Below, piece after piece: positions 47,450 through 51,900 of a stretch of DNA of 64,000 nucleotides (the stretch's first letter is position 1; each line of letters begins with the position of its first letter). The notes below the pieces were generated by a model that was not told the origin of the DNA, made no database searches, and saw nothing but the letters and a program-made list of their open reading frames with translations. Both the position numbers and the translations under genes were made by a program. Source of the stretch: Octopus bimaculoides (lineage: Eukaryota); contig NC_068992.1 of NCBI RefSeq assembly GCF_001194135.2, positions 7,817,588-7,881,587 on the forward strand, written 5' to 3'.

Positions 47450-48775
47450 GAAAGAAAGAAAAAAGAAACGAAAAATATGTGATTAAGTAATGTCATGTAG
47501 GTTCGAGACAGGATCAACATCTTTATCTAAAAGTGCGCCAAAATCCAAAGAAGATTAAAAGGAAATGTTTGTTGTGAAGGGTTGGCAGCGAAACTTTACT
47601 ACCAATAACTGTGTTTATCCCCCACCATCACTTGGCAACCGATGTTGGTGTGTTTGCATCCCTGTCTCATTCTACTTTATCACTTTACCTTATCCCATTC
47701 CCCTTATGCAATGTATCCCAGTCCCTATCAGACTCTCTCTCTCTCTCTCTCTCTCTCTCTCTCTCTCTCTCTCTCTCTCTCTCNNNNNNNNNNNNNNNNN
47801 NNNNNNNNNNNNNNNNNNNNNNNNNNNNNNNNNNNNNNNNNNNNNNNNNNNNNNNNNNNNNNNNNNNNNNNNNNNNNNNNNNNNNNNNNNNNNNNNNNNN
47901 NNNNNNNNNNNNNNNNNNNNNNNNNNNNNNNNNNNNNNNNNNNNNNNNNNNNNNNNNNNNNNNNNNNNNNNNNNNNNNNNNNNNNNNNNNNNNNNNNNNN
48001 NNNNNNNNNNNNNNNNNNNNNNNNNNNNNNNNNNNNNNNNNNNNNNNNNNNNNNNNNNNNNNNNNNNNNNNNNNNNNNNNNNNNNNNNNNNNNNNNNNNN
48101 NNNNNNNNNNNNNNNNNNNNNNNNNNNNNNNNNNNNNNNNNNNNNNNNNNNNNNNNNNNNNNNNNNNNNNNNNNNNNNNNNNNNNNNNNNNNNNNNNNNN
48201 NNNNNNNNNNNNNNNNNNNNNNNNNNNNNNNNNNNNNNNNNNNNNNNNNNNNNNNNNNNNNNNNNNNNNNNNNNNNNNNNNNNNNNNNNNNNNNNNNNNN
48301 NNNNNNNNNNNNNNNNNNNNNNNNNNNNNNNNNNNNNNNNNNNNNNNNNNNNNNNNNNNNNNNNNNNNNNNNNNNNNNNNNNNNNNNNNNNNNNNNNNTA
48401 CACATATATATATGTATATACACACGCACACAACACACATATTATTGCGTGTGTGTATATATATATATGTATAAAAGATGTTTAGATTTATTTCTGGACT
48501 TTAGTGTTTATCGTATTTCTTGTAATTATTGTTATTATTGAAGTCTACGCCACAATTTCAAAAACAGTGAATAACAAAGATATTCTAAAACAAGAATTAC
48601 TAAGACATTTTGTTTGTTTGTTTCTTTTTTTTATCCCTCCCTTCTCTCTTTTTCTCTCCTTTTTTATACAGTTTTTTTATATTCACTTCTATTTTGATTT
48701 TTGTTTTGTTCTTCATTTGGTAAGGAGGGAACTTCCACTTAGTCGTCTGCAATTTTCGTTTATCATTAACCCGAG

Positions 48776-48810
48776 TGACGTCATAGGTGACCAGTCGCTT
48801 GTATTATAAA
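48776..48810 (+). promoter_or_regulatory. Omega-crystallin promoter 1: perfect CRE (TGACGTCA, 48776-48783) and TATA box (TATAAA, 48805-48810)
   Basis: Palindromic CRE 21 bp upstream of TATAAA, about 125 bp upstream of the ATG. Confidence 0.7.
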
Positions 48811-48932
48811 TTCCAGTGAAATCGCCTGCAGGTGTCTAGATTCGTACTTGTTGCCAACGGTTCAAAACTAAGTCTTGAAGGCTTATTTCCAATTCTGTTT
48901 TTAAACGATTCACTACATTAACTATTGACATA

Positions 48933-48983
48933 ATGGCTGGAATTCCACCTCCCAATAAGAACCCAGAGATTAAGTTTACCAAG
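48933..48983 (+). CDS. Omega-crystallin exon 1a ([17 protein letters not shown])
   Basis: ATG downstream of CRE and TATA; donor AAG/gtacag; joins exon 2 in phase 0 to give the ALDH-typical [13 protein letters not shown]. Confidence 0.88.
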
Positions 48984-51900
48984 GTACAGTAATTTTATCT
49001 TTAGTCTTTATTATATTCCTGTGTCGATAAGTAAAAAGAAAAGTTTTATACCGTGTATGTGTGTGTGTGTGTGTTTGTATTATGATTATTGTTATTATTA
49101 TTATCATTATTATTATTATTATTATTATTATTATGCAACAATGTTGTTCACAGTGACTTGAAGTCCTACGATTACTTACATACAAAGTCACTGTCAACAA
49201 CATTCTCGTACAAGAATAATAAATTTGTACTCTGCAAAAATATAGAGTAACCCATCAGATTAGTGTAAATCTGTTTTAATTATAAATAAATAAATATAAA
49301 TGTGCCCTTTTAAAGCCTAGCCAGGCTCATGCGCCCGGTTTCCCGGTTTCTGTGGCGTATGTGTTCCCCAGCTGGACGAGATGCCAGTCCATCGCAGCGT
49401 TACTCATTTTTGCCAGTTGAGTGGAACCGCCATTTGTCGTTCACGACGAGAAAAACCATCACACACACACACACACACACACACACACACACACACACAC
49501 ACATGTATGTATTACATGTGTGTATGTATATTATATTTTCGTTTCCCATTAATCTGAGTAACGTCATAAGTGACCAGTTTTTTTATTGTCACTTGTAATA
49601 TAAATTCCATTGAAAACTTCTCCAGTTGCCGAGATTCGTACTTGTTGCCAACGGTTCAAAACTAATTCTTGAAGGCTTATTTCCAGTTTTGTTTTTAAAC
49701 GATTCACTTCATTAACTATTGACATAATGGTTGGAATTCCACCTCCCAATAAGAACCTAGAGGTTAAGTTTACCAATGTATAGATGTGATGATCATAGCT
49801 GGAACGACTTCAATCATAACTATGTCCGATCAAAGTTTACCTATGTCACAAAACTAGTCAACGTGGGCGATTTTGGTTGTTCTCCATGCTTGAAATAACT
49901 GCAGATCTCTGCAAAGAACATATTGAATAATGTAATCACTGATACAGTATATCTCAAACAACGAGACGAGATTACCAGGCCTGGTTTGTCTTTGGTTATC
50001 AGATTGCTTGATCAAGGCCGATCAGGAACTAAAAAGCAATAACGTAAATGCAAACAAGGACAATGTATAAATAGTGAGACAGGTCAGATCCACTGGTGGT
50101 CTACCAACTCATGATTCCTCTTCAGTCAAAAGATCCAGTCAGTTGGGATTTTTCTCATCTCAGCTATTTGGTTACGTCTCAAATCCCTCAGATCAAACAC
50201 AGACGTCTTAAAAATAAGAAGTTAAGCAAATAATGTAGTTGTTGAATAATGAAGTCCAAGATACATTATGTCTGTGAATAAAGAAAGGGTGGTTACGACT
50301 CAATCACCATTGATTAGAGCTATAGCCGAACACAACTGACTTGGGATTAAAACTTAACAAAAACAATATTAAAATTACCACCATGACCATCACCACTTAC
50401 AGAAACTCAACAAAAGAACTTGTCTATGGATATCGACGAATTATGTGGATAGCGGGTTACTACCTGTAACCTAAGGTATCCACAAGTTTTCAGCAGTCTT
50501 TCAAGTGCTTAGAACCATCCTGATAATCCTTGCTGTCCCTAAGAGACAAACTTTCTATATGGTATTGCACTGGGCATTCTACTTCAATCTCCTTCAGCCA
50601 TTTGTCTTCATCTTGGATTACTGTTCCCAACCAATTATTATACGCACGACCTTTACTGCTCGTCCCATATTTTCTCCATTCGATTCATGAAGCCTCTTTT
50701 ATTTGGCTTACTTCACAGCCAGCATTCTATTACTATTTTGTTTACATCTTTTCTCCATTTCATTCTTTTCTTTTGCACTTTTGACTACGATTTTGGTCCT
50801 GGTCAATAGCTTGATGACGTTCTGCCGGAGCTTGATAAGATACTCCCGACTTGCCCTGCATGACACCTTCACTGCTAACAGTTACAGTCCCGTTAGCGCA
50901 GTTCTGGTTATTATTTAATTTTGACAGTCTTTCTAAAAATAATGATCTCTGTTAGAGGATGCTTAGAAACCTAGGGTGATGATGAGCTCTTCATGCGTTG
51001 CTTTCATTATACCGGTGCTCTATAAAACTCAATCGATTGATTCTCAATAATGGCGTCATTGGTCGATCGTTCAGTCAATTATATTTGCCTCGATTTTTTG
51101 CTTTCAGATTTTCATTAACAACCAGTTCGTTGATTCAGCCAATGGCAAGACTTACCCTGTTATCAATCCTTACACGACGAAGAAGATTTGTGACGTTCAG
51201 GAAGGAAGTAAGGTAAGCAAGAAACCGTCATTATAAACCTATCGTTAACCATTTTCGTTGGGTGGCCAGCATCTCTTATCTTTTTCTTTTTATTTGTTTC
51301 ACTCATTAAACTGTGGCCACATTTTAATTTTCAAAACACTTTTGTTCTCTTATGCCAACAAATGTACGATGATGTGAACACAATAAGACAATAACGCATG
51401 CGCAGTTGTATCACATATATGACGGAAATATGATAATGATAATGATGATTCTTTTTGTTTTGTTGTTAATTTTTGGGGGATATAAATGACATTGATCATT
51501 CGTTGACATAGTTCTCTTTATCACATTATTAATTTCTAGCTGTATATTTTTTGAAGTTCTTCTTATGTTATGAATATTAGCATTGCGAAACCAATGGTCA
51601 TTCTCTGACCAGCCATAACAATCAGCTTCCTAATATAATAATTTAGTCTTTCGGCAAAACAGACTGTTTAAATAAGTGCCAGACTTTAAAAAAAAATGTA
51701 CTGGAGTCGATTTGTTCGACAAAACCCATTAAGGCAGTGTCCCAGCATGGCTACGTTCCAATGATTAAAACTTAAAGGTTTGAAATAAGCTTGTCGAGTG
51801 AAAGAGACAGTACTCATGACTTTTGTAGGCCCTTCTAGACTGGCGTGATTGATGTGGTTGACGTTTTGTTTAAACATTTGAAAGCGAACGTTAGCAAACG

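What the first reader, a model, noticed from the sequence alone, without database searches (positions are those of the whole stretch)
48752..49781. Tandem duplication of the omega-crystallin promoter, 5'UTR and first coding exon (possible dual-promoter system)
Seen: 48752-48987 is repeated at 49535-49781. The UTR+exon part has 8 substitutions in ~146 bp. Both copies keep CRE(-like), GTGACCAGT, TATAAA, ATG and a GT donor in phase 0, so either could splice to exon 2 and give a 495-aa protein. Copy b has four coding changes, all non-synonymous (A2V, P11L, I13V, K17N), a weakened donor (AAG/gtacag to AAT/gtatag), a CRE mismatch and a remodelled TATA-to-TSS segment. The CRE-TATA gap grows from 21 to 32 bp, about one helical turn. 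Inference: either tissue- or stage-specific alternative promoters (e.g. lens versus non-lens, a route for enzyme-crystallin recruitment) or a decaying duplicate acting as a shadow enhancer. I know of no description of this arrangement, but could not search.
Basis: partly seen in the sequence, partly recalled or inferred. Interest (0 to 1): 0.8.

Follow-up and report, generated by a model that had tools for sequence, protein, structure and literature searches.

The report
Decaying duplicate of omega-crystallin promoter/exon 1
The octopus lens-protein gene omega-crystallin carries a second, about 250-bp copy of its promoter and first exon inside intron 1; the copy is real and shared by three Octopus species, but it changes as fast as surrounding junk DNA, so it is most likely a decaying relic, not a second working promoter.

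Summary
The window is the Octopus bimaculoides omega-crystallin gene. My 14-exon model using copy A equals XP_014771974.1 exactly.

The duplication is not an assembly artefact. Orthologous A and B copies lie in the independent O. sinensis and O. vulgaris assemblies, while Argonauta hians and the cuttlefish Acanthosepion pharaonis have one copy.

All known omega-crystallin N-termini are A-type. Between O. bimaculoides and O. sinensis, copy A differs at 3.8% of sites, copy B at 8.1-8.9%, and flanking non-coding DNA at 7.6%. Between O. sinensis and O. vulgaris the counts are A 0/247, B 5/246, background about 1.4%. The B reading frame has 7 substitutions (6 non-synonymous) against 0 in A.

In O. 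bimaculoides, B has also lost the CRE core and the -1G of an already weak donor. Its U1 pairing is -1.9 kcal/mol, against -5.1 to -11.8 for the 13 real donors. No B-type protein is on record.

Verdict: an old partial duplication whose downstream copy drifts neutrally. The dual-promoter idea is unsupported, but no RNA data were available to test it directly.

The parts
48752..48989 (+). Copy A: working promoter-proximal region, 5'UTR, first coding exon and the first 6 nt of intron 1 of omega-crystallin
   Evidence: Repeat arm. Used by the annotated protein XP_014771974.1. Diverges from O. sinensis at 3.8%, against 7.6% for the flanks.
48776..48783 (+). Perfect CRE palindrome TGACGTCA of copy A, 21 nt upstream of TATAAA (48805-48810)
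   Evidence: A bZIP-type site sits in the same place in Argonauta (TGAGGTCA) and Acanthosepion (TGAGTCA).
48933..48983 (+). Exon 1A coding part, [17 protein letters not shown], with donor AAG|GTACAG in phase 0
   Evidence: Identical in three Octopus species. Matches cDNA-derived N-termini of E. dofleini, C. minor and squid.
48990..49534 (+). Spacer between the copies: (TG)n, (ATT)n, an inverted repeat, an interspersed-repeat copy (about 49282-49450) and (CA)n. It has no homology to the sequence after copy B.
49535..49783 (+). Copy B: duplicate of promoter, 5'UTR, exon 1 and 6 nt of intron, lying inside intron 1. Its first ~85 nt (relative to the full ~335-nt unit seen in O. sinensis/O. vulgaris) are replaced by microsatellite in this species.
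   Evidence: Orthologues at L001:10860-11191 and L002:16643-16949. Diverges at 8.1-8.9%, which is the neutral rate.
49559..49566 (+). Degenerate CRE TAACGTCA of copy B. The G>A change is specific to O. bimaculoides. TATAAA lies at 49599-49604.
49727..49777 (+). Pseudo-exon 1B open frame [17 protein letters not shown], with donor AAT|GTATAG
   Evidence: All four changes are derived. U1 duplex -1.9 kcal/mol, against -5.1 to -11.8 for the 13 real donors.
51108..51212 (+). Exon 2, the common acceptor exon in phase 0
48933..63163 (+). Whole omega-crystallin coding region: 14 exons, 495 aa, an inactive ALDH1-type protein
   Evidence: The model built equals P0134 / XP_014771974.1. Pfam Aldedh E = 1e-168.

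Best explanation
A segment of about 335 bp holding the proximal promoter (CRE, GTGACCAGT, TATA), the 5'UTR, the 17-codon first exon and six intron bases of omega-crystallin was duplicated locally. This happened in an ancestor of O. bimaculoides, O. sinensis and O. vulgaris, after the split from argonauts. The region is dense with microsatellites, so the likely mechanism is template switching or unequal exchange; that step is inferred. The upstream copy A remains the working promoter and first exon. The downstream copy B sits in intron 1 of transcripts started at A and is removed with the intron, because it has no acceptor. Copy B is no longer maintained by selection and drifts at the neutral rate, so it is a relic promoter and pseudo-first-exon. 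In O. bimaculoides it has already lost the CRE core and the -1G that a +5G-less donor depends on. In O. sinensis and O. vulgaris its motifs are still intact, which is expected by chance about one time in five at this level of divergence. Shown here: the duplication, its phylogenetic distribution, the derived state of B, the neutral rate of B against the constraint on A, and the weak donor. Inferred: lack of transcription or function of B, and the mechanism of origin.
For: (1) B is orthologously present in three independent assemblies, with 10 fixed A/B differences, so the duplication is old and not undergoing recent gene conversion. Argonauta and Acanthosepion have one copy. (2) Rates between O. 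bimaculoides and O. sinensis: A 9/238, B 20-22/246, and eleven flanking non-coding segments pooled 348/4559. Fisher tests give A vs B p = 0.025, A vs flanks p = 0.03, B vs flanks p = 0.46. Between O. sinensis and O. vulgaris: A 0/247, B 5/246, background about 0.0135-0.016. Parsimony branch counts are A 3+4 and B 9+9+2+3. (3) Coding part: 0 changes in A across three species, against 7 in B (6 non-synonymous), including P11L in the PEIK motif conserved in molluscan ALDH1 proteins. (4) Every cloned or annotated omega-crystallin N-terminus is A-type. The three possible B-type 495-aa proteins are absent from the protein collection. (5) B of O. bimaculoides has TAACGTCA and AAT|GTATAG, with U1 duplex -1.9 kcal/mol, outside the range of all 13 real donors.
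Against: No RNA-seq, CAGE or proteomic data could be queried, so non-use of B is inferred and not observed. The module is short (about 246 sites) and the p-values are modest. O. sinensis and O. vulgaris are near-sister species, so there are effectively two independent lineages. In those two species B keeps a perfect CRE, TATA, ATG, an open frame and a donor nonamer identical to A's, so it could still fire. A neutral average rate over 250 bp does not exclude function residing in a few short motifs. Absence of B-type proteins from databases is weak evidence, because even A-type transcripts from read-archive assemblies are missing for Octopus.
Confidence: 0.7

Rival explanations
1. Dual-promoter gene. 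Both modules initiate transcription, perhaps in different tissues (lens versus skin chromatophores or other tissues). Each first exon splices to exon 2, giving two 495-aa proteins that differ at 3-4 N-terminal residues.
For: Both copies have CRE(-like), TATA, ATG and a phase-0 GT donor. B of O. sinensis and O. vulgaris is fully intact, with a donor identical to A's. The open frame is kept in all three species. Omega-crystallin is known from lens, skin chromatophores and light organ (PMC6397165), so tissue-specific promoters would have a use.
Against: B evolves at the neutral rate, and its coding part evolves faster than A's, with 6 of 7 changes non-synonymous. No B-type protein is annotated or on record. 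B of O. bimaculoides has a broken CRE and a donor weaker than any real donor of the gene. Retention of 19 motif bases and a 17-codon frame at about 7% divergence is expected in roughly 20% of cases by chance (my estimate counts).
Confidence: 0.1
2. Copy B no longer makes mRNA but acts as an intronic regulatory element. It would be a shadow enhancer, or an extra CRE/TATA platform about 0.8-1.1 kb downstream, that boosts or buffers transcription from promoter A.
For: B retains the CRE in O. sinensis and O. vulgaris, and GTGACCAGT and TATAAA in all three species. Its position close to the promoter is conserved.
Against: There is no excess conservation over flanking intron. Ten of the roughly 20 differences between B of O. 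bimaculoides and B of O. sinensis fall in the promoter part, and the CRE itself is hit in O. bimaculoides. No activity data exist.
Confidence: 0.15
3. Assembly artefact: two haplotypes or collapsed reads stitched in tandem in a gap-rich short-read scaffold.
For: The window has 12 N runs (4,565 N), one ending 353 bp upstream of copy A.
Against: There is no gap between the copies. The copies differ by 10-14%, far above allelic divergence. The same two copies, with shared B-specific substitutions, occur in the O. sinensis and O. vulgaris chromosome assemblies.
Confidence: 0.01

Closest known systems
Tandemly duplicated alternative first exons, each with its own promoter, spliced to common downstream exons (clustered protocadherins, UGT1A; chelicerate Dscam 5' cassettes, PMC4835542 listed)
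   Same: The architecture on paper is the same: a repeated promoter plus first-exon unit ending in a 5' splice site in a compatible phase, upstream of a shared exon 2.
   Different: In those systems each variable exon is transcribed and is under purifying or diversifying selection. Here the second unit evolves neutrally, encodes only 17 residues with no known variable function, and has no transcript or protein evidence.
Partial-gene duplicates, or relic (pseudo) first exons left in introns by small segmental duplications
   Same: A short local copy of the 5' end of a gene, without the rest of the gene, accumulates substitutions at the background rate. It shows motif loss in one lineage and chance retention in another.
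   Different: This copy includes the complete proximal promoter and is still nominally splice-competent in two of three species. It has survived since before the split between O. bimaculoides and the O. vulgaris/O. sinensis lineage.
Scallop omega-crystallin (ALDH1A9) promoter, Carosa et al. 2002, as summarised in PMC5737492
   Same: It is a TATA-containing promoter of an ALDH-derived lens crystallin with clustered upstream factor sites. The octopus copy A has TATA plus a CRE that is positionally conserved as a bZIP site in Argonauta and cuttlefish.
   Different: The scallop gene is described with a single, experimentally mapped promoter regulated by Pax6. No duplication is described there, and no functional data exist for the octopus promoter.
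Shadow enhancers
   Same: A second, nearby element with overlapping binding-site content.
   Different: Shadow enhancers are defined by activity and usually by conservation. Neither is shown here, and conservation was tested and not found.

Membership tests
Cephalopod omega-crystallin (enzymatically inactive ALDH1-type lens protein) | Full-length aldehyde dehydrogenase fold/domain | tested here: met
   Pfam PF00171 Aldedh, E = 1.1e-168, residues 24-486.
Cephalopod omega-crystallin (enzymatically inactive ALDH1-type lens protein) | Orthology to cloned omega-crystallins of octopus and squid | tested here: met
   The window model is 100% identical to XP_014771974.1. It shares a 90%-identity cluster with E. 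dofleini P30841, and is 80% identical to the squid cluster containing P30842.
Cephalopod omega-crystallin (enzymatically inactive ALDH1-type lens protein) | Loss of the catalytic cysteine of ALDH (GQCC.AGSR motif) | tested here: met
   Exon 9 encodes GQCRWSGAR, where the active octopus ALDH1 paralogue P0024 has GQCCVAGSR. It also has ELSGKCP in place of ELGGKSP. Inactivity itself is taken from the literature (PMC6397165).
Cephalopod omega-crystallin (enzymatically inactive ALDH1-type lens protein) | Abundant expression in lens | not testable with these tools
   No expression data were accessible.
Alternative-promoter / alternative-first-exon gene | Two or more promoter plus first-exon units with phase-compatible 5' splice sites upstream of a common exon | tested here: met
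   Both units have TATA, ATG and a phase-0 GT donor. However, the donor of B in O. bimaculoides is far weaker than any real donor of the gene.
Alternative-promoter / alternative-first-exon gene | Each unit is transcribed and spliced to the common exon | not testable with these tools
   Only indirect evidence is available. No B-type protein is annotated in three species or present in the 15-billion-protein collection.
Alternative-promoter / alternative-first-exon gene | Each unit is maintained by selection, i.e. evolves more slowly than neutral DNA | tested here: not met
   B diverges at 0.081-0.089 against 0.076 for the flanks (p = 0.46), while A diverges at 0.038 (p = 0.03). Between O. sinensis and O. 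vulgaris, B is 5/246 and A is 0/247.
Shadow enhancer | Sequence conservation above background | tested here: not met
   The CRE is mutated in O. bimaculoides.
Shadow enhancer | Regulatory activity overlapping that of the primary element | not testable with these tools
   This needs reporter or chromatin data.
Assembly / haplotig duplication artefact | Copies near-identical, separated by or abutting gaps, and absent from independent assemblies | tested here: not met
   The copies diverge by 10-14%, there is no gap between them, and they are present in the O. sinensis and O. vulgaris assemblies.

The most novel reading that the evidence does not exclude
In the O. vulgaris/O. sinensis lineage, copy B still has a perfect CRE, TATA, ATG, an open frame and a donor identical to copy A's. 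There, both promoters might fire, making omega-crystallin a tandem-promoter gene. This could raise output in lens cells, or separate lens from skin or chromatophore expression. O. bimaculoides would then show the same element in the course of being lost. That would be a natural before-and-after pair for studying how promoter duplication contributes to crystallin-level expression.
Probability: 0.1. Interest if true: 0.55.

Novelty: new member of a known kind. Interest (0 to 1): 0.25.

Why it matters
If copy B were active, it would be a compact example of promoter duplication in a gene recruited for very high, tissue-restricted expression, which bears on how enzyme-crystallins acquire lens expression. 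As the evidence stands, its value is more modest. First, it warns annotators that intron 1 of Octopus omega-crystallin holds a look-alike first exon with ATG and GT. Second, the A/B pair works as an internal control that highlights which promoter bases are constrained: the CRE/bZIP site, TATA and the N-terminal 17 codons. Third, it documents small microsatellite-associated duplications in octopus genomes. I found no description of the arrangement in the papers I could search.

Tried and rejected
(a) A protein search with the first 99 residues returned only 13 fragment hits and nothing from Octopus, so it gave no information on exon 1 use. (b) An exact look-up of hypothetical B-type full-length proteins for the three species found none in the collection. 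This is weak negative evidence. (c) A scan of JGI metagenome contigs for ATGGYTGGAATTCCACCTCC gave five contigs that match only over the 20-21-mer, so they are chance hits with no cephalopod DNA. (d) Searches for homology between the A-B spacer and the sequence downstream of B or upstream of A found none beyond microsatellites. The duplicated unit is therefore about 335 bp, not a larger unit worn down to its functional core. (e) Gene conversion as the reason for A/B similarity was rejected. The copies group by type with 10 fixed differences, and only one site (alignment column 180) shows a species-parallel pattern. (f) tRNA and Rfam scans of the window found nothing, so there is no RNA gene in or near the repeat. 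(g) Literature searches found no paper describing this duplication and no usable divergence date, so only relative timing is given. (h) The upstream first exon 'MTSGQAPVVVK...' in the O. vulgaris annotation was considered as a third promoter. It was rejected as probable mis-annotation because the sequence is not conserved in O. bimaculoides, and the same model reads through intron 13.
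Full report
WHAT IS THERE. The stretch 48752-48989 (copy A) recurs at 49535-49783 (copy B). The repeat finder gives a 196-nt arm at 90% identity and a 44-nt arm at 86%, offset by an 11-nt indel. A pairwise alignment shows one colinear module that starts at ATTTTCGTTT and ends six bases into the intron (GTAYAG), after which similarity stops abruptly. 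BLASTN gives E = 2.6e-81. The window has 12 N runs, but none lies between 48399 and 57058, so both copies sit in one contiguous piece of assembly.

MOTIFS.
- Copy A: TGACGTCA 48776-83, GTGACCAGT 48787-95, TATAAA 48805-10, ATG 48933, AAG|GTACAG after 48983.
- Copy B: TAACGTCA 49559-66, GTGACCAGT 49570-78, TATAAA 49599-604, ATG 49727, AAT|GTATAG after 49777.
- The eight UTR and exon substitutions and the four amino-acid changes (A2V, P11L, I13V, K17N) are also correct.

THE GENE. I assembled 14 exons from the window using AG/GT boundaries: 48933-48983, 51108-51212, 52180-52320, 53966-54092, 54907-54968, 56239-56367, 56907-57020, 57556-57658, 58330-58514, 58953-59117, 60191-60348, 60612-60686, 61758-61797 and 63131-63163. 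The 495-aa product is identical to omega-crystallin XP_014771974.1 of Octopus bimaculoides. It is an Aldedh-domain protein. It has GQCRWSGAR where the active octopus ALDH1 paralogue has GQCCVAGSR. This fits the literature statement that omega-crystallin is an enzymatically inactive ALDH found in lens, skin chromatophores and light organ (PMC6397165). The annotated protein uses copy A.

NOT AN ARTEFACT; AGE AND DISTRIBUTION. I fetched the orthologous loci of four other species:
- O. sinensis: L001, CM016870.1.
- O. vulgaris: L002, OX597825.1.
- Argonauta hians: L003.
- The cuttlefish Acanthosepion pharaonis: L004.
Both O. sinensis and O. vulgaris carry A (L001:9759-10068; L002:15580-15889) and B (L001:10860-11191; L002:16643-16949) in the same order and orientation. 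In a nine-sequence alignment the copies group by type, with 10 fixed A/B differences shared across species. The duplication therefore predates the split of O. bimaculoides from the O. vulgaris/O. sinensis lineage, and there has been no recent homogenisation. From the parsimony counts (stem 10-12; post-split A about 3.5 and B about 10.5 per lineage), the duplication is roughly 1.7-1.9 times as old as that split. This timing is an inference. Argonauta and Acanthosepion each have a single exon 1, both by peptide scan and by self-BLAST of the module. In O. sinensis and O. vulgaris the A/B homology runs further 5', to an ATACAG about 280 nt before the ATG, so the unit is about 335 bp. In O. bimaculoides the first ~85 nt of B are replaced by (CA)n/(TG)n microsatellite.

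WHICH COPY IS ANCESTRAL IN STATE. Every omega-crystallin N-terminus known from cDNA or annotation has A2, P11, I13 and K17 (or conservative variants), as in copy A. This holds for E. dofleini, C. minor, O. sinensis, Argonauta, Nototodarus and a squid transcript. All changes in B are therefore derived. A2V and P11L are shared by B in all three species. I13V and K17N are specific to O. bimaculoides. N8S is specific to O. sinensis and O. vulgaris, and E12K to O. sinensis.

TWO POLARITIES ARE REVERSED. Copy A of O. sinensis and O. vulgaris has the long CRE-TATA spacer (about 30 nt), like all B copies. The 21-nt spacing is therefore a roughly 10-nt deletion specific to A of O. bimaculoides, not an expansion in B. 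Likewise GTATAG is the donor of A in O. sinensis and O. vulgaris and of all B copies, so GTACAG is the novelty.

IS COPY B UNDER SELECTION? This is the central test.
- Substitution-only divergence between O. bimaculoides and O. sinensis: A 9/238 (0.038); B 20-22/246 (0.081-0.089); eleven flanking non-coding segments 0.052-0.116, pooled 348/4559 (0.076).
- Fisher tests: A vs B p = 0.025; A vs flanks p = 0.03; B vs flanks p = 0.46.
- The independent O. sinensis/O. vulgaris comparison gives A 0/247 and B 5/246. The background is about 0.0135 after removing the A/B cross-matches, or 0.016 with them.
- In the 51 coding bases, A has no change in three species, while the B tree has seven changes, six of them non-synonymous. 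These include P11L in the PEIK motif that is conserved in molluscan ALDH1-type proteins.
So A is constrained and B is indistinguishable from neutral DNA. The B lineage has diverged by about 7% from the A/B ancestor. At that level, keeping all 19 bases of CRE, TATA, ATG and GT plus an open 17-codon frame is expected in roughly one lineage in five. This is my estimate from the counts. The intact motifs in O. sinensis and O. vulgaris are therefore not evidence of function.

SPLICE COMPETENCE. As a simple proxy I computed U1 5'-end duplex energies for positions -3 to +6.
- The 13 real donors of the gene span -5.1 to -11.8 kcal/mol.
- Exon 1A is -5.6. It lacks +5G and depends on the exonic AAG.
- Exon 1B of O. 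sinensis is -5.7.
- Exon 1B of O. bimaculoides (AAT|GTATAG) is -1.9, outside the range of every real donor.
Together with the G>A hit in the CRE core (TAACGTCA), copy B in the species of this window looks functionally degraded.

EXPRESSION EVIDENCE. None is direct. Only A-type proteins exist for O. bimaculoides, O. sinensis, C. minor and E. dofleini. The O. vulgaris entry uses neither copy: it starts at an upstream exon discussed under 'Other observations'. The three hypothetical B-type full-length proteins are not in the 15-billion-sequence collection. This is weak evidence, because read-archive transcript assemblies for Octopus omega-crystallin seem to be missing altogether.

MECHANISM OF ORIGIN (INFERRED). 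The locus is packed with microsatellites that abut the copy boundaries. O. sinensis and O. vulgaris also hold a third fragment, copy C, at L001:8271-8354 and L002:14032-14115. It comprises 84-88 nt of 5'UTR plus the first eight codons, is A-type, and has no promoter and no donor. It is embedded between (ACAT)n on one side and (ATGT)n on the other. This points to repeated small template-switch or unequal-exchange events, and not to a designed regulatory architecture. Copy C is not in the assembled O. bimaculoides sequence, but the corresponding interval there contains N gaps at 47364-47373 and 47784-48398.

CONCLUSION. The finding is a real, genus-level, roughly 335-bp partial duplication of the omega-crystallin 5' end. 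The best-supported reading is that A is the working promoter and first exon, and B is a neutrally decaying relic that is spliced out with intron 1 (confidence about 0.7). A working second promoter (about 0.1) or a residual enhancer role (about 0.15) cannot be excluded without RNA, CAGE or reporter data. Both are most plausible in O. vulgaris and O. sinensis, where B is still intact. I found no prior description of the arrangement. In kind, it is an ordinary small segmental duplication.

OTHER OBSERVATIONS. A bZIP-type site upstream of TATA is positionally conserved in the single-copy promoters of Argonauta (TGAGGTCA) and Acanthosepion (TGAGTCA). This supports the functional importance of the CRE in copy A. 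The O. vulgaris protein model CAI9731050.1 starts at an upstream exon not conserved in O. bimaculoides and ends by reading through intron 13, so it is probably mis-annotated.

Noticed in passing
L001:8271-8354 (O. sinensis) and L002:14032-14115 (O. vulgaris); expected near window 47300-48400: A third, partial copy (copy C) of the module lies about 1.5 kb upstream of copy A. It comprises 84-88 nt of 5'UTR plus the first eight codons, is A-type (MAGIPPPN), and has no promoter or donor. It is embedded between (ACAT)n and (ATGT)n microsatellites. It is absent from the assembled O. bimaculoides sequence, where the interval holds N gaps (47364-47373, 47784-48398).
   Followed up: partly
window 48796 (between GTGACCAGT and TATAAA of copy A): Copy A of O. 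bimaculoides carries a lineage-specific deletion of about 10 nt (TTTTTATTGT-like) in its working promoter. This shortens the CRE-TATA distance from about 30 nt to 21 nt, relative to copy A of O. sinensis and O. vulgaris and all B copies. The effect on promoter strength is unknown.
   Followed up: partly
L003:9800-9862 (Argonauta hians); L004:9835-9866 (Acanthosepion pharaonis); window 48776-48810: A bZIP-type site lies upstream of the TATA box in all three single or working omega-crystallin promoters: TGACGTCA (Octopus), TGAGGTCA (Argonauta; also an AGGTCA nuclear-receptor half-site) and TGAGTCA (AP-1-like, cuttlefish). The element type is conserved in position while its exact sequence varies.
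   Followed up: partly
L002:10001-10040 (O. vulgaris), orthologous to window ~46320-46365; C-terminus at window 61798-61850: The O. vulgaris protein model CAI9731050.1 begins with an exon (MTSGQAPVVVK...) 5.6 kb upstream of copy A whose sequence is not conserved in O. bimaculoides. It ends by reading through intron 13 (…VSIWFHLYYIYIA) instead of using the last exon ([10 protein letters not shown]). It is probably a mis-annotation.
   Followed up: partly
window 58330-58514 (exon 9) and 57556-57658 (exon 8): The catalytic-site motifs are altered: GQCRWSGAR in place of GQCC.AGSR (the nucleophile Cys position is Arg), and ELSGKCP in place of ELGGKSP. These changes are shared by octopus, argonaut and squid omega-crystallins.
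   Followed up: partly
window 49282-49450: An interspersed-repeat copy (SINE-like, with no tRNA or Rfam hit) lies in the A-B spacer of O. bimaculoides. Its best matches in O. sinensis and O. vulgaris are inverted copies elsewhere in intron 1 (L001:13028-13170; L002:18798-18940), and a short related piece lies at window 46709-46734. It appears to be a species-specific insertion between the two copies.
   Followed up: partly
window 47289-47450: A 15-nt tandem repeat (AGCATGTGAAAGGAA, at least 10 units) is interrupted by a 10-N assembly gap.
   Followed up: no
window 22947-23318 (-): An ORF with a CCHC zinc knuckle (Pfam zf-CCHC, E = 3e-4) lies upstream of the crystallin gene. It is probably a retroelement gag remnant.
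   Followed up: partly
L001:12723-14720 vs window 50926: Intron 1 of O. sinensis and O. vulgaris has an insertion of about 2 kb relative to O. bimaculoides between copy B and exon 2. As a result, B lies 1.3 kb from exon 2 in O. bimaculoides but 3.7 kb away in O. sinensis.
   Followed up: no
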